A model generated the notes under the pieces. That model saw nothing but the letters and a program-made list of their open reading frames with translations. It was not told the DNA's origin and ran no database searches. A program made the position numbers and the translations under genes. Positions 2,243-37,127 of a DNA stretch of 64,000 bases are shown here, piece by piece (position 1 is the first letter of the stretch; every line of letters begins with the position of its first letter). The stretch is from IMG/VR virus record IMGVR_UViG_3300034072_001021, positions 195,141 to 259,140 of that record; one strand, written 5' to 3'.

Positions 2243-4138
2243 ATGTCCGTCAACGATCCGCACAACGGTCAAGAATCCGTGAACACTGGCGCCGAGCAGC
2301 GTCAAGACCGTGCAGCCCCTCAGCAGCAACAGCGTCAGGCCCCGGTGGTTAACTCCATCCTCGACCTGAACCGTCTCCTGGGTGGCGGCATGTCCCGTCG
2401 CACCAGCGGTGAACAACTGATCGCCGCCATCGCCGCCTGCAAGTTCTGGTTCTCCGCTGACCGTCAACTGGCCGCCGCCGGTGGCATCGATCTGACCAAG
2501 ATCCAGGTGATCGGCCTGGAAGCTTCCGAGCACAACGTCGAGGTCTCCTCGGTCATCCTGGCCTACCCGGTCGAGTCCCAGGGCACCCTGCGTGTTCTGA
2601 CTCACTTCCTGGCCCTGGAATCCAGCCTGGCTGAAGAGAACCAGGTCCGTACCGTCAACCTGAACCATCGCGACTACCCGCTGCCGGTAGTGGTCTCCGA
2701 CTACATGACCGAGTCCTACATGGCTCTGGTCGATGAGATCGTGAAGAAGCACTTCGAGCAGTCCCGTCGCAACGTCGAAGTACAGCGTGCCGGCTGGCGC
2801 ACCGTCTCCCGCAAGGTCAACTTCTCCGAGCCGGAAAGCACCGAAGCCCGCAACGTCGTGTTCTACGCCCAGGCGGCCATCGTGGCCATGTACAACCACG
2901 TCTACGAGCGTGACCTGTACTTCAGCCTCGAGTGGCTGAGCAAGAACTCCACCCTCGAGATCTCGGTCGACATGTCCGGCCGTGAGGCCCACAGCGCCGA
3001 TGGCCTGCCGCGCCGCCGCGACATCGCGGTGAACGTAGCCGGTAAGGTGGCCAAGGGCGACCAGACTGCTTCGGTTGGCCTGGCCAGCCTGGGTGGTTAC
3101 GTCAGCCTGATGTACTCGCCGCCCCAGGACGAAGACCGCTGGAATCGCAACGTCCGTCGCGATACCCCGTACTTCACTCCGACCCTGATCATCAACGCCA
3201 TCGACACCGGCACCAACAGCATCACTGCTGAGCAGCTGCTGCTCGGTCTGGCCGGCGCTTCGGTGATCAGCTCCAACCAGGCGTGGGCTCAGACCTTCCT
3301 GCCGGGCGAAGTTGCCCGCGGTGAGATCGACTACCGTGACACCGGCCTCCTGGGCCTGCTCGGTCCGGACAAGACCGCTTTCGAGATCGAAGCACGTACC
3401 AACCTCGACACCGACAAGTGGGGTCAGTACTTCTTCTCCCTCGTGAACGAGAACCTGGCCTGGGCTATCGAACTCGAGGAGGGTGGTGACAACTCCTGGA
3501 TCATGGGTCTGCTGCTCGACGCTGCTTCCGACACCAGCCCGAACCGTGACGCCGTACGTCGTCTGTACGACTTCGCCGATCGTCTGACCAACAACAACTT
3601 CTCCCGTCGCGCTGCCGAACTGGACGTCACCGTCCCGCTGCAGCTGTCCGGTGCCCGTTACCTGACCGGTACCTGGATCGACGAGCGTGGTGAAGAGCGT
3701 GACCTGCGCGAGTGGGATCTGCTCCGTTGGATGGCCCAGAACCCGACCGACGAAGGCACCTCGGCCCTGAACTACCAGGACGTCATCGACCGCGTCGACC
3801 TAGACGTGGAAGTGCGCGTATCCGAGCAGTTCACCCAGCTGACCAGTGCTCTGGGCGCGTCGAACGTGAAGTTCAGCCGCTACGTCGACCTGGCGTACAT
3901 CAATCCGAAGTTCATCCAGGCCCTGGCCGCTGCTGTGGCAGACTGCAAGATCAACATCGATCAGCGCAGCGCTCACTACAGCTTCGGCGCTCGTCGTCTG
4001 CGTGGCAACACTCGCATCCGCGATTTCGTGGGTGGCGACCTGACCAACGGCATGCTGTCCAGCCGTCGGATCGGTGGCAACGAGCGTTCCCTGCGTGGTC
4101 ACGTGGGCAACGGCTTCGGCCATGGTTCGTCCTTCTAA
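2243..4138 (+). CDS. chmA: chimallin, phage nuclear shell protein
   Basis: 631 aa with a Q-rich flexible N-terminus; GTWIDERGEERDLREWDLL and NPKFIQAL match motifs recalled from known chimallins; directly upstream of the nvRNAP beta'-N gene; strong codon bias. Confidence 0.88.
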   Translation: MSVNDPHNGQESVNTGAEQRQDRAAPQQQQRQAPVVNSILDLNRLLGGGMSRRTSGEQLIAAIAACKFWFSADRQLAAAGGIDLTKIQVIGLEASEHNVEVSSVILAYPVESQGTLRVLTHFLALESSLAEENQVRTVNLNHRDYPLPVVVSDYMTESYMALVDEIVKKHFEQSRRNVEVQRAGWRTVSRKVNFSEPESTEARNVVFYAQAAIVAMYNHVYERDLYFSLEWLSKNSTLEISVDMSGREAHSADGLPRRRDIAVNVAGKVAKGDQTASVGLASLGGYVSLMYSPPQDEDRWNRNVRRDTPYFTPTLIINAIDTGTNSITAEQLLLGLAGASVISSNQAWAQTFLPGEVARGEIDYRDTGLLGLLGPDKTAFEIEARTNLDTDKWGQYFFSLVNENLAWAIELEEGGDNSWIMGLLLDAASDTSPNRDAVRRLYDFADRLTNNNFSRRAAELDVTVPLQLSGARYLTGTWIDERGEERDLREWDLLRWMAQNPTDEGTSALNYQDVIDRVDLDVEVRVSEQFTQLTSALGASNVKFSRYVDLAYINPKFIQALAAAVADCKINIDQRSAHYSFGARRLRGNTRIRDFVGGDLTNGMLSSRRIGGNERSLRGHVGNGFGHGSSF

Positions 4139-33311: not shown

Positions 33312-33764
33312 ATGGAAATGTTCCTCGGTGTAAAGATCGTCGCAGCCAAACCCATGACCCGTCTGGAATACAACCAGTACCGTGGATGGGAACTGCCTAA
33401 GGACGAGCGTGGTGATGATGAAGGTTATCTCGTCGAGTACTTCGAGAGCGAACCCAACCATCCAGACCACAAAGGTTACATCAGCTGGTCTCCCAAAGAG
33501 CAGTTCGATAAAGCACATTACTCCATGGGCTTTGTGGGCGACCTACCTCCGTTCATTCAACGAATTCATGGTGAAGCTGCACAGCTCGTGCAAAACTGCA
33601 CCAAGATCACTGACTTCATTACCAAGTGCAATGAAGGACAGATCGAGAACATCAACCCACAGTACCTCGACCTCATGATTCGCCAACGTGCGGTCATGGA
33701 GACCCATCTGGGAATCCTGCGTGATCGTCTCGAAATGCTCGCTAAAGGGAAATCCACCCTATAG
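33312..33764 (+). CDS. two-domain candidate anti-defence nucleotide-sponge protein
   Basis: N-domain GVKIVAAKPMT..Y..YRGW..EGYLVEY..YISWSPKEQFDKA; C-terminal helical hairpin LMIRQRAVMETHLGILRDRL. Confidence 0.8.
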   Translation: MEMFLGVKIVAAKPMTRLEYNQYRGWELPKDERGDDEGYLVEYFESEPNHPDHKGYISWSPKEQFDKAHYSMGFVGDLPPFIQRIHGEAAQLVQNCTKITDFITKCNEGQIENINPQYLDLMIRQRAVMETHLGILRDRLEMLAKGKSTL

Positions 33765-33777
33765 TGTGCATATTACC

Positions 33778-34390
33778 GAAATACGAGTAATGGCAGAACA
33801 GACGGCAGCTATCACGGCGGCTTAAGGTGTTCTGTAAAGGGGTGGTTCCCGTTCCGTTACTGGTTTATCTTGAGATATACTCTGCCAATGGCTGACTGAC
33901 CGAGTGCACACTCCCTCAGGCTTCTGTAGCAAGAGAAGAACACAGCCAAGGGGCGGCGTTCTCAAGATTACAGGTGTTGGCTTCACCCAGCATCAAGTCC
34001 CAACGATTTATGGTAGCTTAAGTTCGAAGCGCCGATCGCCATTGTGCAGATAAGGCAGCGCGGATCGGATTGGGAGATTCCCGGTCGGCTACCACCCGTT
34101 AGGACATCCGTGTCCTTGATTCCATGTCAGTCGGCAACAGCTCTTCGTGGCAGTTCGCATTCAACGACTCGGCAGCCTACGTGGCGGCCAACTGGATAGA
34201 GGCACGGGTGTCCGTCTAAATCGGCAGACCTCGTGAGCTGTTGATCCAACCGACAACGATCAGAAACCTCCCTTCGTCGGGCGGCCAGATAGGTCATTAG
34301 TTGGTTGAAGACTCAGGGTGCCATCAGAACTGCACCCATGTACGCAAGTACATACCGAGGGGTTAAAGTCCCAAGCTCTGGCTCGTTTTC
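33778..34390 (+). ncRNA. candidate large structured RNA B (about 610 nt)
   Basis: Closing helix 33778-33787/34382-34390; helices 33867-33875/33960-33968 and 33891-33900/34126-34135; ends 3 nt before tRNA-Asn; no ORF of 60 aa or more in any frame. Confidence 0.7.
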
Positions 34391-34393
34391 AAT

Positions 34394-34468
34394 TCACGCT
34401 TAGCAAAGTGGTAATGCAGCAGACTGTTAATCTGCCTACCCCTGGTTCGAATCCAGGAGCGTGAGCCA
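34394..34468 (+). tRNA. tRNA-Asn (GTT)
   Basis: Acceptor TCACGCT/AGCGTGA, anticodon arm GCAGA-CTGTTAA-TCTGC, TTCGAAT loop, encoded CCA. Confidence 0.95.
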
Positions 34469-34469
34469 T

Positions 34470-34650
34470 ATCCGTAAACTACTGTTTCGACAGGAGGGGT
34501 GAAAATCCCAACACGGTGTCCCAGAAGTACCGGCGTAAGCTGGGTTCTCCGGGCCTTAACCTAGCTGGTTGACTGGTCGGTGCTTTGCATCTAAGTCCGC
34601 TTCAGGACATCAACTATAAATAGGGCTGGAGACAGCCCCATTTATTCTCT
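34470..34650 (+). ncRNA. candidate structured RNA C ending in a GNRA terminator-like hairpin
   Basis: GGGG-TGAAAAT-CCC T-loop-like element, GGC-GTAA-GCT, GGGCTG-GAGA-CAGCCC then T-rich. Confidence 0.4.
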
Positions 34651-34670
34651 TTCGTCAGAAAGGGAAGAAT

Positions 34671-34796
34671 TCAAGTGATTGGAAACCGTGCACCGTGTGA
34701 TTCGGGCTTAGCCTTAAGACACCATTAACGTCTGAGGGGTGATCCTTTACAACCGCATCTGCAGTTGTGGTGGTTTGACTCCACCCGCTTGTCTCA
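34671..34796 (+). ncRNA. tRNA-like element with expanded core
   Basis: T-arm GGTGG-TTTGACT-CCACC (34769-34785); CAAGTG/CGCTTG acceptor-like pairing. Confidence 0.35.
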
Positions 34797-34800
34797 AACC

Positions 34801-34887
34801 GGGGAGCCCCCAGAGGGTGCTAATCTAGCCCGCTACATCCGTACTCTCCCGTCGGGTACACCAGGGTGTCTGGCCTGCTCCCCACCT
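34801..34887 (+). pseudogene. degenerate tRNA-like element
   Basis: Perfect 7-bp GGGGAGC/GCTCCCC followed by ACCT; internal CCCG/CGGG and CCAG/CTGG stems; no TTC loop. Confidence 0.45.
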
Positions 34888-34892
34888 ATTTC

Positions 34893-34966
34893 GCCTCTAT
34901 AGCTGGAAGGTCAAGCAGCTCACTTGTAATGAGCCGATCTCAGTTCGATTCTGAGTGGAGGCACCA
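34893..34966 (+). tRNA. tRNA-Thr (TGT)
   Basis: Acceptor GCCTCTA/TGGAGGC, anticodon arm GCTCA-CTTGTAA-TGAGC, TTCGATT loop, encoded CCA. Confidence 0.95.
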
Positions 34967-34970
34967 TATT

Positions 34971-35341
34971 GGGACTGATCGGCGTCGTCACTGGTTATTC
35001 TGAAACCTAAATGCGCAAGCACATGGTTATGGATATAAACGATCAACGAAAGTGAAGTCGTTGCAATGACGAACGATCAGCCCCTCTCAAGCGCGCTTGT
35101 AAGAATGTACTCGGTTGCCGATCCAAAGTAACCCTCGTAAGGTGAATTCAGCGTATAGACCTCAGGATGAGGGAAAATGCCCGGACACGAGAGGAACACA
35201 TTCTTACAAGTGGATTATTTACCGTGTAGTCTCTCAGGCGGGACACTCTCCACAGGAGCCTTCGGCACCACCACCCCACCCTATAGTGACTGGTGACCTG
35301 TTGGTGTGGAGAGGCATGTTCGATTCTAGTGCACGGTACCC
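34971..35341 (+). ncRNA. candidate structured RNA D (about 370 nt, tmRNA-sized, tRNA-like ends)
   Basis: Starts 4 nt after tRNA-Thr; 13-bp perfect helix 35096-35108/35198-35210; GNRA and UUCG hairpins; GGGACTG/CGGT(A)CCC end pairing. Confidence 0.6.
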
Positions 35342-35477
35342 TATTTCGATGATCGGCCTCGACTGCTGGCAGTGTGCCCTCAGGGTTGTGGAGATAACCT
35401 GAACGGATGACGGCAGTAAGGGCGGTGTCCACTACCCTAGAAACTTGGGTCATCGAACGAACAAAAGGACAGTGAAT

Positions 35478-35933
35478 GTGAAATGGGTCACCTGGATCGT
35501 TTCGTTATTGTTCGTGTTTGTCATGCACTACGCCGACGCTTACCCTCTCACCGAGATCAAACTTCTCAGTGATGACGTGACCAGCGTTTATGATGGCGAT
35601 ACGCTCACTGTCCAAGTGCCCTACATTCCAGACGTGTTTGGTAAAGACCTCTCCATCCGGATTGTGGGTATTGACACACCTGAGATGCGTAGTACGTGCG
35701 CAACTAAGGAACAACGTGATCGTGAGAAAGCTTTGGCCATCAGGGCCAGAGACGTAGTGGTTGCCATGGTTACATCGGGTCATCGAGTGACCCTGACCAA
35801 CCTCGATCGAGATAAATACTTCCGTATGCTAGCAAGTGTTTATGTCGACGGACGAAGTGTTTCCGATGAGCTGATAGCTCAAGGACTAGCCGTCCCTTAT
35901 TCAGGCGACACCAAGATAGGCTGGTGTGGCTAA
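35478..35933 (+). CDS. thermonuclease (SNase-like) with N-terminal signal/TM anchor
   Basis: VYDGDT, IRIVGIDTPE, DKYFRMLA, LIAQGLA; hydrophobic WVTWIVSLLFVFVM; GTG start after AAAGGA. Confidence 0.9.
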   Translation: MKWVTWIVSLLFVFVMHYADAYPLTEIKLLSDDVTSVYDGDTLTVQVPYIPDVFGKDLSIRIVGIDTPEMRSTCATKEQRDREKALAIRARDVVVAMVTSGHRVTLTNLDRDKYFRMLASVYVDGRSVSDELIAQGLAVPYSGDTKIGWCG

Positions 35934-35944
35934 TGATTCCACTG

Positions 35945-35985
35945 GTTTTATTTTTGCAGATACATTACTCATCTGACAAATAACC
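35945..35985 (+). promoter_or_regulatory. putative early promoter inside a long imperfect hairpin
   Basis: GGTTTTATTTTTG-CAGAT-ACATTACTC-ATCTG-ACAAATAACC. Confidence 0.65.
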
Positions 35986-35995
35986 AATGGAGGTT

Positions 35996-36544
35996 ATGAT
36001 GGGTAAACTAACGGGCTGGACTGTCGACGACGAGGAAGAAGTATTCGTTCCCTGTCCAGACTATCCAGACCTTTTCGACATAGGTTCTAAAGGGACTCTT
36101 AGAAGCCGCCGTACTGGTAAAATCTTATCCCAAACCCCTGACCATAAAGGCTACCTTAGACATGCCACTAAAATAGGCGGTCGTTCAGGTAAGTCGATTT
36201 GCGTAAGGGTTCATGTTCAGGTTGCTAAAGCATTTGTTGGAAGAGAATCTGACGATCTGCAAGTAAACCATCTGACAGGCGATAAGGCAAAGAACGATTA
36301 TACATCTCTCGAATGGTGCACTGGTAGTCAGAACTTAGAGCATGCACATGCTACTGGCTTAATGCGTAATGCCAAGGGAGTTGACCATCCATTAGCAGCA
36401 CTTTCTCCCGAAGATGTTGCGGTTATACTTTCTCTTAAAGGGAAGGTTAGTCAGAGAGAACTCGGAAGAAGATTTGGGGTAAATAAATCAACCATAGCCA
36501 GAGTCCATAATGGAATCGGTTATGGTGAAGAAGACCCTAGCTAG
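35996..36544 (+). CDS. free-standing HNH homing endonuclease (NUMOD4-like N-terminus, HTH C-terminus)
   Basis: VHVQVAKAF..QVNHLTGDKAKN..LEWCT..QN; C-terminal SQRELGRRFGVNKSTIARV. Confidence 0.88.
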   Translation: MMGKLTGWTVDDEEEVFVPCPDYPDLFDIGSKGTLRSRRTGKILSQTPDHKGYLRHATKIGGRSGKSICVRVHVQVAKAFVGRESDDLQVNHLTGDKAKNDYTSLEWCTGSQNLEHAHATGLMRNAKGVDHPLAALSPEDVAVILSLKGKVSQRELGRRFGVNKSTIARVHNGIGYGEEDPS

Positions 36545-36588
36545 TACTCCGCCAAACAACACCACTCCAAACCAAAAGAGTAATTGAG

Positions 36589-36765
36589 ATGACCACCACT
36601 GTACGAGTTGAAGCTCACTGCGCTAACAACAAGCAAGTTGTCGTGACCATCCAGAACCGTGTTTCCGGTGAGGTGCATGAAACGTTCATCTTGCAGGACG
36701 GTGAAAAAGCTGATCGCGTTGTCTACGACGATCGTCAGCTGCTGACCCATGAAGAATTGAAGTAA
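36589..36765 (+). CDS. small hypothetical protein, 58 aa (not in ORF track)
   Basis: MTTTVRVEAHCANNKQVVVTIQNR...HEELK; phage-like codons; upstream AAGAG. Confidence 0.65.
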   Translation: MTTTVRVEAHCANNKQVVVTIQNRVSGEVHETFILQDGEKADRVVYDDRQLLTHEELK

Positions 36766-36772
36766 AAGTTTT

Positions 36773-36975
36773 GGGATCTTAGCATAGTCCTGTGGGCTTT
36801 TGACACGGGGTGGTTAATGCGCCTTGCGGTACTCTTATCGGTGTATAGGGCAGTAGCGCATGTGGGTGGTTCTGCATGTTAGCGAAATCCCACAAGACCA
36901 GTGGGTTAATCAGGAATCCGAACGGTAAGAAAAGACGCAAAGGAGAAGGGGGTTCGAATCCTCAATTTCCCGCCA
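36773..36975 (+). ncRNA. candidate RNA E: tRNA-framed 203-nt RNA with insertions
   Basis: 5' GGGATCT-TAGCATAG..TGGTTAATGC D-arm with inserted hairpin; 3' GGGG-TTCGAAT-CCTC and ATTTCCC-G-CCA. Confidence 0.6.
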
Positions 36976-37127
36976 AACACGCCTCCTCAGAAGGGAGCTA
37001 GCCGCCTCCGAGGTCCATCCGGAGGAGGGTTCGATGTGTAACACCCAGATGGACTGTTGTACGATCTGGACATGTACCAGCCGCAGCAAGTGACTACGGT
37101 TGAAGCAGTAACCGAAACAAGCCTCTG

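What the first reader, a model, noticed from the sequence alone, without database searches (positions are those of the whole stretch)
34971..35341. RNA D: tmRNA-sized RNA with tmRNA-like 5' start but no canonical tag or Ala identity
Seen: it begins GGGACTGAT 4 nt after the tRNA-Thr CCA, contains GAAACCTAAATGCGCAAGC and AAGTCGTTGCAATGACGAA, and has a perfect 13-bp helix (35096-35108/35198-35210), CTCTCCAC/GTGGAGAG, and a 3' TTCGATT loop followed by CGGTACCC that pairs with the 5' end (one bulge). Known: E. coli tmRNA starts GGGGCTGAT, is about 360 nt, and has TAGTC-GCAAACGACGAA at the resume site. However, there is no G3:U70 pair, the T-stem is poor, and no frame ends in an ALAA-like tag. Inference: a diverged tmRNA derivative or mimic (for example an SmpB or ribosome-rescue modulator), or an unrelated RNA.
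Basis: partly seen in the sequence, partly recalled or inferred. Interest (0 to 1): 0.7.

Follow-up and report, generated by a model that had tools for sequence, protein, structure and literature searches.

The report
Not tmRNA: modular phage RNA insert
The supposed tmRNA-like gene is a 375-base, strain-specific insert next to a tRNA gene of a giant (phiKZ-like) phage; it is built from three separately folding RNA pieces, one of them a new conserved RNA fold and one a decayed tRNA copy, and nothing ties it to tmRNA.

Summary
ARAGORN finds no tmRNA, even with relaxed thresholds. Rfam RF00023 has no match at E<=10, while its controls match. The proposed 5'/3' end helix has probability <0.001. 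The phage has no SmpB. The likeness to E. coli ssrA is at chance level (rank 51 of 103,606 genome windows).

Positions 34967-35341 are an exact insertion after the CCA of tRNA-Thr. Two close relatives (L006, L032) have the empty site. The insert is bounded by a ~50-nt diverged direct repeat (tRNA T-loop, 3' end and trailer), which explains both "tmRNA-like" ends.

The insert has three modules:
- **D1** (34971-35084) is an orphan hairpin domain.
- **M** (35094-35215) is a ~117-nt three-way-junction motif. It occurs in five related phage lineages at different sites. The two complete genomes checked have one copy each. 14 of its 24 pairs show compensatory changes. It matches no Rfam family.
- **D3** (35220-35341) is a tRNA-derived cloverleaf with its own 7-bp acceptor helix. 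A homolog sits at another site in L032.

Three RNA libraries contain this region but not the flanking genes. The closest analogue is the T4 tRNA cluster, with its stable species I/II RNAs and homing endonuclease. The function of M is unknown.

The parts
34893..34966 (+). tRNA-Thr(UGU) with encoded CCA. The insertion begins at the next base.
   Evidence: ARAGORN; Rfam tRNA 58.2 bits. It is identical in relative L006.
34943..34994 (+).
   Evidence: the repeat finder D3/D4, spacing 374-375. Local alignment. Score 64 against 26.4 +/- 4.8 in 1000 shuffles, 0 as high.
34967..35341 (+). It is absent from close relatives.
   Evidence: Empty site in L006 and L032...GGCACCA|TGTTTCGATGATCGG.... L005/L007 carry an HNH_3 gene plus a replacement tRNA at the same site.
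34971..35084 (+). Module D1: an independently folding domain closed by GGG.CTGATCG (34971-34981) with CGATCAG.CCC (35074-35084). It is an orphan.
   Evidence: MFE of the whole and of the part (z = -2.8). No homolog in any fetched locus. A variant strain in run X9 lacks 34797-35112.
35094..35215 (+). Module M: a conserved three-way-junction RNA motif. It has an outer helix 35096-35108/35198-35210, two inner helices, hairpins CCT-CGTA-AGG and CCTCA-GGA-TGAGG, and conserved unpaired AAGTA, GRATAG, GGAAAA and GGAA.
   Evidence: Covariance model R1 scores 116.8 bits here and 91-111 bits in L005/6, L009/11, L013/22/24/25/27 and L031. 14 of 24 pairs have compensatory changes, and 93.4% of cells are paired against 29-44% when the partner is slid. 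One copy each in the phage's own genome and in G001. A variant junction at 35216 in run X4 coincides with the end of the model match.
35220..35341 (+). Module D3: a tRNA-derived cloverleaf-like element.
- Acceptor helix TACCGTG/CACGGTA (35220-26/35332-38).
- U8, A9, G10, G18 and G19 at the canonical tRNA positions.
- D-arm 35229-35244.
- Long arm 35246-53/35306-13 with a ~52-nt variable insert.
- T-loop TTCGATT 35319-25, flanked by a mismatched stem, then CCC.
   Evidence: Folds. Homolog at another site in L032 (nhmmer E 1.5e-15), with conserved ends, a replaced middle and the helices kept. Natural variant 35232 T>C turns a U.G pair into C-G. Not called as a tRNA by ARAGORN or Rfam.
35318..35365 (+). 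Direct repeat, copy 2: the D3 T-loop and 3' strand plus the start of the ancestral trailer (TATTTCGATGATCGGCCTCGACTG).
35342..35471 (+). Ancestral tRNA-Thr trailer and leader of the nuclease gene. It is present in relatives that lack the insert, and the same RNA-library contigs that cover D3 also cover it.
   Evidence: nhmmer matches to L005-L008, L023, L032 and L033. Contigs 35181-35408 (X17), 35186-35434 (X20) and 35149-35474 (X24).
35472..35933 (+). Staphylococcal-nuclease-type (SNase, PF00565) gene downstream. It was used as the anchor to fetch relatives.
   Evidence: phrog_452 endonuclease. 92 homologs, all but one carrying PF00565.
34660..34682 (+). Relic of the 3' end of a second, L006-type copy of M (AAGGGAAG...ATTCAAGTGATT). 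The rest of that copy and its small zinc-ribbon gene are missing here.
   Evidence: Alignment of window 34469-34900 with L006 3151-3800. M in L006 lies at 3453-3578.

Best explanation
RNA D is not one gene and not a tmRNA. It is a 375-bp strain-specific cassette inserted directly after the CCA end of tRNA-Thr. The site lies in the ~1.7-kb tRNA/non-coding-RNA island of an uncultivated phiKZ-like jumbo phage (259 kb).

The cassette holds three RNA modules, each closed by its own helix:
- **D1** is an orphan domain.
- **M** is a ~117-nt three-way-junction motif kept by selection in a small clade of related phages.
- **D3** is a decayed tRNA copy.

The ~50-nt diverged direct repeat at the cassette borders is the footprint of recombination at tRNA-like sequence. 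This island is constantly reshuffled and homing-endonuclease genes pass through it. The repeat also produces both of the 'tmRNA-like' ends.

How it most likely works (inferred):
- The island is transcribed as one long precursor, as in the T4 tRNA cluster.
- RNase P and 3' endonucleases cut at tRNA-Thr and at the tRNA-like D3.
- The well-folded pieces survive as abundant stable RNA.
- M is the functional part and acts as a trans-acting, probably protein-binding, structured RNA.
- D3 serves at most as a processing signal, and D1 is passenger sequence.
For: **Shown**
- Insertion: exact empty sites in L006 and L032. The same site holds an HNH_3 gene plus a replacement tRNA in L005/L007. The border repeat is significant.
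- Modularity:
  - Each module folds separately.
  - M occurs alone between two small genes in L009.
  - D3 occurs alone at another site in L032.
  - Variant strains break at 34796/35113 and at 35216.
- M is a real RNA structure: 14 of 24 pairs have compensatory changes. Its 8 G.U cells fit only the + strand. Indels of 2 and 16 nt rule out coding.
- M has one copy in each of the two complete genomes checked. The window keeps a relic of an L006-type M at 34660-34682 and carries a divergent M in the cassette. This suggests one M is retained.
- RNA presence: metatranscriptomes X17 and X20 and the 55-Mb RNA library X24 contain 34992-35474 or parts of it, and none of the flanking genes.
- Among strains the cassette and its trailer carry 0.3-1.8% differences, against 3-7% in the neighbouring genes (table 8).
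- Phage context: split RNA polymerase beta subunit. The nearest GenBank relative is Pseudomonas phage pPa_SNUABM_DT01.

**From the literature**
- The T4 tRNA cluster is a ~1.75-kb transcript. It yields eight tRNAs plus stable species I and II RNAs and hosts the homing endonuclease SegB (PMC2330249).
Against: - Transcript ends, strand and processing sites were not measured. Logan contigs have no direction, and their ends depend on coverage and strain branching.
- X24 and similar libraries are labelled 'RNA?' and may carry DNA.
- M was found in only five lineages, with 8 distinct sequences. The alignment was fitted to the model.
- M is absent from DT01 and from several related loci, so it is not essential to the group.
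- In three lineages an unrelated ORF starts 0-20 nt after M, which would also fit a cis-acting role.
- Nothing here shows what M binds or does.
- D3 is not recognised as a tRNA by any model.
- The low divergence of the cassette could reflect recent spread rather than selection.
Confidence: 0.6

Rival explanations
1. Diverged tmRNA or tmRNA mimic. The 5' and 3' ends would pair into a tRNA-like domain that engages SmpB or the ribosome.
For: - The length is 371 nt.
- It starts with GGGACTGAT, and two further strings are collinear with E. coli ssrA. Global score of D1 against ssrA 1-130 is 43.5 versus 15.8 +/- 7.8 in shuffles.
- A T-loop heptamer sits near the 3' end.
Against: - ARAGORN finds no tmRNA, at default or relaxed thresholds.
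- RF00023 has no match at E<=10, while its controls match.
- The terminal helix has P<0.001 and costs +13.3 kcal/mol.
- There is no G3:U70 pair and no tag frame.
- The phage has no SmpB.
- The ssrA likeness ranks only 51st of 103,606 windows of the same genome.
- Both ends are explained by an insertion repeat.
- The piece is absent from near-identical strains.
Confidence: 0.02
2. Recombination debris. The whole cassette would be non-functional scar sequence (a pseudo-tRNA plus fragments) that is merely co-transcribed with the tRNAs.
For: - D1 has no homolog.
- D3 fails tRNA models.
- The island is mosaic, with breakpoints in many runs and homing-endonuclease genes coming and going.
- The cassette is dispensable in L006 and L032.
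Against: - M keeps its fold through compensatory changes across five lineages, with one copy in each of the two complete genomes checked.
- D3 keeps its helices despite a replaced middle.
- The cassette is less variable than the neighbouring genes.
Confidence: 0.15
3. M is a cis-acting 5'-UTR element (riboswitch, thermosensor or protein operator) that controls the ORF that follows it.
For: - In L009 the conserved GAGAGGAA lies 9 nt before the ATG of a 61-aa gene.
- In L013/L024 and L031 an ORF starts within ~20 nt after M.
Against: - The downstream ORFs are unrelated to each other.
- In the window and in L005/L006 no ORF follows M.
- In L031 a terminator-like hairpin follows M.
- No known riboswitch model matches.
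Confidence: 0.1
4. M is a self-cleaving or otherwise processing ribozyme that cuts the polycistronic island transcript.
For: - It has a compact junction with conserved unpaired purine-rich strands.
- Contigs from two independent metatranscriptomes begin inside M, at 35181 and 35186.
Against: - Other libraries read across that point: 35049-35199 in X28 and 35149-35474 in X24.
- No ribozyme family matches.
- Contig ends are not RNA ends.
Confidence: 0.08
5. The cassette is a small selfish mobile element (a tRNA-derived miniature element, or the remnant of a homing cassette) that targets tRNA 3' ends.
For: - There is a clean insertion exactly after the CCA, with a tRNA-like repeat at the borders.
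- D3 is a clean 129-nt insertion at another site in L032.
- Divergence is low.
- The neighbouring HNH gene is strain-specific.
Against: - The cassette has no integrase, transposase or endonuclease.
- Only two insertion sites were seen for D3 and one for the whole cassette.
- There is no target-site duplication at the L032 site.
Confidence: 0.15

Closest known systems
Phage T4 tRNA gene cluster with stable species I and II RNAs and the SegB homing endonuclease (PMC2330249)
   Same: - A ~1.7-kb island on one strand holds tRNAs interleaved with structured, stable RNAs of unknown function.
- The whole is presumably made from one precursor.
- Strains differ in gene content, and homing-endonuclease genes sit between or inside tRNA genes.
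   Different: - There is no sequence or model similarity to the T4 RNAs that I could test. They are not in the libraries used here.
- The host phage is a phiKZ-like jumbo phage with its own RNA polymerases.
- Processing and stability are inferred here, not measured.
tmRNA (Rfam RF00023 and ARAGORN models)
   Same: - The length is about 370 nt.
- It lies next to tRNA genes.
- There is a T-loop heptamer and an acceptor-like 3' strand.
- Three short strings are collinear with E. coli ssrA.
   Different: - No model match.
- No end-to-end acceptor helix.
- No G3:U70 pair.
- No tag reading frame.
- No pseudoknot signature detected.
- Polymorphic presence among near-identical strains.
Elements that integrate at tRNA gene 3' ends (att duplication of the T-loop to 3' end segment)
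   Same: The insertion is bounded by a direct repeat that starts in the T-loop and runs past the 3' end of the tRNA, and the tRNA gene stays intact.
   Different: - The cassette is only 375 bp and has no integrase.
- The repeat copies are only ~80% alike.
- The second copy belongs to a separate tRNA-derived module (D3), not to a displaced half of tRNA-Thr.
GOLLD and ROOL large ornate RNAs (PMC5737381; 10.1101/2024.12.08.627333)
   Same: They are structured non-coding RNAs of unknown function that are often found near tRNAs and in phages.
   Different: - M is about 117 nt, not 580-800 nt.
- Neither family matches at E<=10.
- There is no evidence that M forms multimers.
tRNA-like processing signals (mitochondrial tRNA punctuation; mascRNA at the MALAT1 3' end). 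From my own knowledge.
   Same: A tRNA-like fold embedded in a longer transcript could recruit RNase P and so define the ends of the neighbouring RNA. This is the role proposed for D3.
   Different: This is not shown here. D3 has a defective T-stem and no variable loop, and RNase P cleavage is untested.

Membership tests
tmRNA | Match to the family covariance model or a dedicated detector | tested here: not met
   RF00023 and its clan have no match at E<=10 in 521 nt, in 5 kb or in the whole 259-kb genome, while the control genomes match. ARAGORN -m finds none, also with -ps. The same ARAGORN run finds E. coli ssrA.
tmRNA | tRNA-like domain formed by pairing of the 5' and 3' ends, with a G3:U70 alanine identity pair | tested here: not met
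Position 3:70 is G-C in that helix and C-G in the local D3 helix.
tmRNA | Internal tag reading frame with a resume codon and a stop, ending in a degradation tag | tested here: not met
   ARAGORN reports no tag. The frames through AAGTCGTTGCAATGACGAA have no ALAA-like end (read).
tmRNA | SmpB partner, aminoacylation and CCA end | not testable with these tools
   The phage genome has no SmpB gene (PF01668) and no CCA-adding enzyme. Binding of host SmpB was not tested. The genomic 3' end reads ACCC, not ACCA.
tRNA (for module D3) | Cloverleaf recognised by tRNA models, with an anticodon loop | tested here: not met
   There is no Rfam tRNA match at E<=10. ARAGORN finds none, with or without introns. 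The anticodon-loop position holds a 52-58-nt insert, there is no variable loop, and the T-stem has 2 mismatches.
tRNA-derived element (for module D3) | Significant similarity to a tRNA, with tRNA landmark residues in register | tested here: met
   A 50-nt alignment to the T-loop, 3' end and trailer of tRNA-Thr scores 64 against 26 +/- 5 in shuffles. There is a 7-bp acceptor helix, and U8, A9, G10, G18, G19 and R26 lie at canonical positions counted from 35220. The T-loop reads TTCGATT.
Group I intron | Match to the intron core model, with splice junctions in flanking exons | tested here: not met
   RF00028 has no match at E<=10. No RNA-library contig joins 34966 to 35342. The insert lies after the tRNA, not within it.
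Y RNA-like (YrlA) / Ro60 system | Ro60 (TROVE) and usually RtcB encoded nearby, with a tRNA-like module inside a Ro-binding stem | tested here: not met
   The genome has no TROVE and no RtcB. No Rfam match.
Stable RNAs of phage tRNA clusters (T4 species I/II type) | Non-coding, structured, encoded among tRNA genes on the same strand, and accumulating as RNA | tested here: inconclusive
   The first three features are met. Accumulation is suggested by three RNA libraries that hold this region but not the flanking genes. However, the strand, the ends and the abundance were not measured.

The most novel reading that the evidence does not exclude
M would be a new class of functional RNA, a ribozyme or a specific protein- or ligand-binding RNA, private to a clade of phiKZ-like (presumably nucleus-forming) jumbo phages. 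It would be kept at one copy per genome while it hops between positions of the tRNA island. D3 would be a tRNA-derived miniature mobile element, a kind of element not described in phages.
Probability: 0.2. Interest if true: 0.65.

Novelty: new variant of a known kind. Interest (0 to 1): 0.42.

Why it matters
- It removes a false lead: this phage does not encode a tmRNA or a ribosome-rescue modulator.
- It shows how an insertion next to a tRNA gene can imitate tmRNA ends.
- It defines a new RNA motif (M), supported by covariation, and a tRNA-derived module (D3) in uncultivated phiKZ-like phages.
- It shows that the tRNA island of these phages is a modular, rapidly reshuffled set of structured RNAs and homing-endonuclease cassettes, much like the T4 tRNA cluster.
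- These RNAs appear in wastewater and aquatic metatranscriptomes where the phage's flanking genes do not. They are therefore probably abundant and stable in infected cells, and M is a reasonable target for finding a new phage RNA function.

Tried and rejected
- **tmRNA.** Rejected; see the membership test.
- **Homology of D1 to ssrA.** It looked significant against shuffles (z about 3.5). It is at chance level against real windows of the same genome (rank 51 of 103,606).
- **Known RNA families.** Rfam finds only tRNAs, at the gathering threshold and at E<=10, on the window and on nine related loci.
- **Coding.**
  - The ORFs across M (35115-35402 on + and 35148-35453 on -) are rejected because homologs differ by 2-nt and 16-nt indels.
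  - D1 is not a recognisable relic of the small zinc-ribbon gene that precedes M in L006 (tblastn E>1).
- **Promoter idea for CCACCCTATAGTG.** There are only three copies in the genome, and it is not conserved beyond close strains.
- **Wider family searches for M.**
  - No match in GenBank phages by blastn.
  - None in 185,579 prokaryote species genomes with the strict pattern.
  - In IMG/VR, only G001 besides the own record. The 16 other hits of the loose pattern were chance.
  - JGI metagenomes gave the source contig plus one new lineage, L031.
  - M is not in DT01, L015, L018, L020, L023 or L033, even with filters off.
- **D3 3' end.** No match in IMG/VR or in prokaryote genomes, so no host tRNA donor was identified.
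- **Wasted scans.** Two related-loci scans, with the baseplate protein and with its alignment, gave nothing useful.
- **Other tRNA-like ends.** A genome-wide scan for T-arm plus acceptor pairs found only the two real tRNAs.
- **Literature.** Papers on phiKZ and 201phi2-1 transcriptomes describe no such RNA.

Full report
**Context.** The window is bases 195141-259140 of a complete 259,140-bp IMG/VR phage genome with direct terminal repeats.
- The phage has the split RNA polymerase beta subunit of phiKZ-like jumbo phages.
- Its nearest GenBank relative is Pseudomonas phage pPa_SNUABM_DT01, at 63% protein identity in a baseplate protein and with a syntenic neighbourhood.
- The finding lies in a ~1.7-kb stretch without credible genes (33765 to about 35471). 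This stretch holds the genome's only two tRNA genes, tRNA-Asn 34394-34468 and tRNA-Thr 34893-34966, both on the + strand.
- A staphylococcal-nuclease-type gene (35472-35933) and an HNH endonuclease gene (35987-36544) follow.

**The observation.**
- The 371-nt stretch folds better than shuffles (z = -2.8).
- The fold is three separate domains, each closed by its own helix:
  - 34971-35084 (D1).
  - 35220-35341 (D3).
That pairing has probability below 0.001 and costs 13.3 kcal/mol when enforced.
- The same 3' strand instead forms a perfect 7-bp helix with TACCGTG at 35220-35226, at probability 0.86-1.0.

**The tmRNA link.**
- ARAGORN finds no tmRNA in the window, in the whole genome, or in the excised region with lowered thresholds. 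The same program finds E. coli ssrA.
- Rfam's tmRNA models give no match at E<=10 on 521 nt, on 5 kb or on the whole genome, while the control genomes match.
- There is no G3:U70 pair and no tag frame. The phage has no SmpB.
- I took E. coli ssrA from the K-12 record and aligned it. D1 against ssrA 1-130 scores 43.5, versus 15.8 +/- 7.8 for shuffles.
- Among 103,606 real 125-nt windows of the same phage genome, D1 ranks only 51st. The resemblance is what a reader scanning this much sequence should expect by chance.

**What makes the ends look tRNA-like.**
- A ~50-nt direct repeat, about 80% identical and spaced 375 nt apart, links two segments. It scores 64 against 26 +/- 5 in shuffles, with 0 of 1000 as high.
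  - 34943-34994 holds the T-loop and 3' end of tRNA-Thr plus 28 nt.
  - 35318-35365 holds the TTCGATT loop, CACGGTACCC and the next 24 nt.
The second contains its counterpart TTTCGATGATCGG.
- I fetched relatives through homologs of the nuclease gene.
- Two close relatives, L006 (about 95% identical) and L032, have the empty site. Their tRNA-Thr CCA runs straight into TGTTTCGATGATCGG..., which is window 35342 onward.
- In L005/L007 the same place holds an HNH_3 homing-endonuclease gene with a replacement tRNA-Thr, inserted into an older tRNA-Thr gene whose two ends remain.

**The cassette is modular.** Contigs laid on the locus show further strain variants.
- One variant lacks 34797-35112 (leader, tRNA-Thr and D1), so that M follows the upstream RNA directly.
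- Another variant joins 35216 to 36976.
- Breakpoints at 34789-34796 recur in four runs.

**Module M.**
- M (35094-35215) is the only module with distant homologs:
  - L009-L012, between two small real genes and downstream of tRNA-Ser.
  - L013/L022/L024/L025/L027.
  - L005/L006, at a different place upstream of tRNA-Thr.
  - L031.
- A covariance model built from six sequences scores all of them at 91-117 bits and nothing else.
- On eight distinct sequences, 93.4% of cells pair, against 29-44% when partners are slid. 14 of 24 pairs show compensatory changes, and no shuffle reaches the observed covariation.
- Indels of 2 and 16 nt exclude coding. G.U pairs fit only the + strand.
- Conserved unpaired strands are AAGTA, GRATAG, GGAAAA and GGAA.
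- The phage's own genome and a second complete genome (G001) have exactly one copy each. DT01 has none.
- The window keeps a relic of the 3' end of an L006-type M at 34660-34682 and carries a divergent M in the cassette. This is consistent with selection for one working copy.
- M matches no Rfam family. It is absent from GenBank phages and from prokaryote genomes at the sensitivity used.

**Module D3.**
- D3 (35220-35341) is tRNA-derived:
  - Counted from 35220, it has a 7-bp acceptor helix.
  - U8, A9, G10, G18, G19 and a purine at position 26 are in register.
  - It has a D-arm, a five-to-eight-pair stem in the anticodon-stem position, and the T-loop heptamer of tRNA-Thr.
- It is also defective:
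  - A 52-nt insert sits where the anticodon loop should be.
  - It has no variable loop.
  - Its T-stem has two mismatches.
  - No tRNA model recognises it.
- L032 has a homolog (E 1.5e-15) as a clean 129-nt insertion at a different site, just upstream of the nuclease start. Its ends are conserved, its middle is replaced and its helices are kept.
- The common natural variant 35232 T>C converts a U.G pair of the D-stem into C-G.

**Module D1.** D1 has no homolog anywhere I looked.

**Expression.**
- Two libraries labelled metatranscriptomic contain parts of this locus and none of the flanking genes. X17 (wastewater) holds 34615-34786 and 35181-35408. X20 (aquatic, random-primed) holds only 35186-35434.
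- A 55-Mb wastewater RNA library (X24) holds 34726-34791, 34992-35142 and 35149-35474, and again no flank.
- The region is therefore very likely an abundant, stable RNA.
- Contigs have no strand, and their ends are not RNA ends, so the boundaries remain unmeasured.
- Among strains the cassette and trailer differ by 0.3-1.8%, while neighbouring genes differ by 3-7% (table 8). This fits either constraint or recent spread.

**Mechanism, with shown and inferred steps.**
- Shown:
  - The insertion polymorphism.
  - The border repeat.
  - The three folds.
  - Covariation in M.
  - Independent distribution of M and D3.
  - Presence in RNA libraries.
- Inferred:
  - The island is one precursor, as in T4, where a ~1.75-kb transcript yields eight tRNAs and the stable species I and II RNAs and also carries the segB homing-endonuclease gene (PMC2330249).
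  - RNase P and 3' endonucleases cut at tRNA-Thr and perhaps at D3.
  - M is the functional, trans-acting part.
  - The shuffling is driven by recombination at tRNA-like sequence and by repair of homing-endonuclease cuts.
- I give the composite explanation 0.6. Within it:
  - "Not a tmRNA" is about 0.97.
  - "Strain-specific modular insertion" is about 0.9.
  - "M is a functional structured RNA" is about 0.75.
  - The specific mode of action is below 0.3.

**Comparison and novelty.**
- The closest known system is the T4 tRNA cluster with its stable RNAs. GOLLD and ROOL share the tRNA and phage neighbourhood, but neither their size nor their models fit (PMC5737381).
- The Y-RNA/Ro60 reading is excluded by the absence of TROVE and RtcB. 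Published phiKZ and 201phi2-1 transcriptome papers describe nothing comparable.
- I rate the finding a new variant of a known kind. The kind is tRNA-island stable RNAs in a phage; the variant adds a new motif with covariation support and a tRNA-derived module.
- Interest is moderate (0.42). The tmRNA idea that made it attractive is wrong, but M is a clean, testable new RNA.

Noticed in passing
window 33765-34393: There is a 630-nt non-coding stretch ('RNA A') upstream of tRNA-Asn. About 355 nt of it are conserved upstream of tRNA-Asn in Pseudomonas phage pPa_SNUABM_DT01 (L004 14767-15093, nhmmer E 6e-15). Its core, 34007-34100, recurs in the L009 and L013 lineages. It matches no Rfam family.
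   Followed up: partly
window 34469-34796: 'RNA C' lies between the two tRNAs.
- Its 3' part, 34615-34786, is one of only two pieces of the locus present in metatranscriptome X17.
- It ends in a T-arm-like hairpin, GGTGG-TTTGACT-CCACC.
- Recombination breakpoints fall at 34789-34796 in four runs.
- The 7-mer CGCTTGT at 34787 recurs at 35094, the edge of M.
   Followed up: partly
window 34797-34892: The leader in front of tRNA-Thr is conserved in front of tRNA-Thr in distant relatives (L013/L024 at E 2e-12, L009 at E 7e-5). It may be a processing or promoter element.
   Followed up: no
window 35987-36544: The HNH endonuclease gene after the nuclease gene is strain-specific. Variant contigs replace 35720-36975 with about 600 other bases or skip it, and several runs have no coverage there.
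   Followed up: partly
L005 3075-3864 (also L007): This is a homing-type cassette. A complete 87-nt replacement tRNA-Thr plus an HNH_3 gene sits inside an older tRNA-Thr gene, whose first ~30 nt and last ~10 nt remain on either side.
   Followed up: partly
L005 1949-2479, L006 2665-3195: A NUMOD4-domain gene (176 aa) occupies the place where the window has tRNA-Asn plus 150 nt, so these close relatives lack tRNA-Asn at this position.
   Followed up: no
L006 3239-3427; L018 846-1022: This is a small conserved zinc-ribbon protein (58-62 aa, CPKC...HAC). In L006 it lies immediately upstream of M. The window has lost it together with most of that M copy.
   Followed up: partly
window 35066-35076; L005 about 2694-2703; L009 about 3652-3662: The octamer ACGAACGA lies 20-30 nt upstream of M in three lineages. 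In L006 and L009 it overlaps the ends of unrelated ORFs in different reading frames. A similar heptamer recurs inside M. It could be a 5' extension of the motif or a protein-binding repeat.
   Followed up: no
window 33754-33766 and 35276-35288: The exact 13-mer CCACCCTATAGTG occurs twice in the island, and a near copy lies at genome position 66149, all on the + strand. The first spans the stop codon of the upstream gene. The second lies in the variable insert of D3.
   Followed up: partly
L023 96-1273: A LAGLIDADG-type ORF is followed by a 99-aa thymidylate-synthase fragment in a related phage. This looks like an intron- or endonuclease-interrupted thymidylate synthase gene.
   Followed up: no
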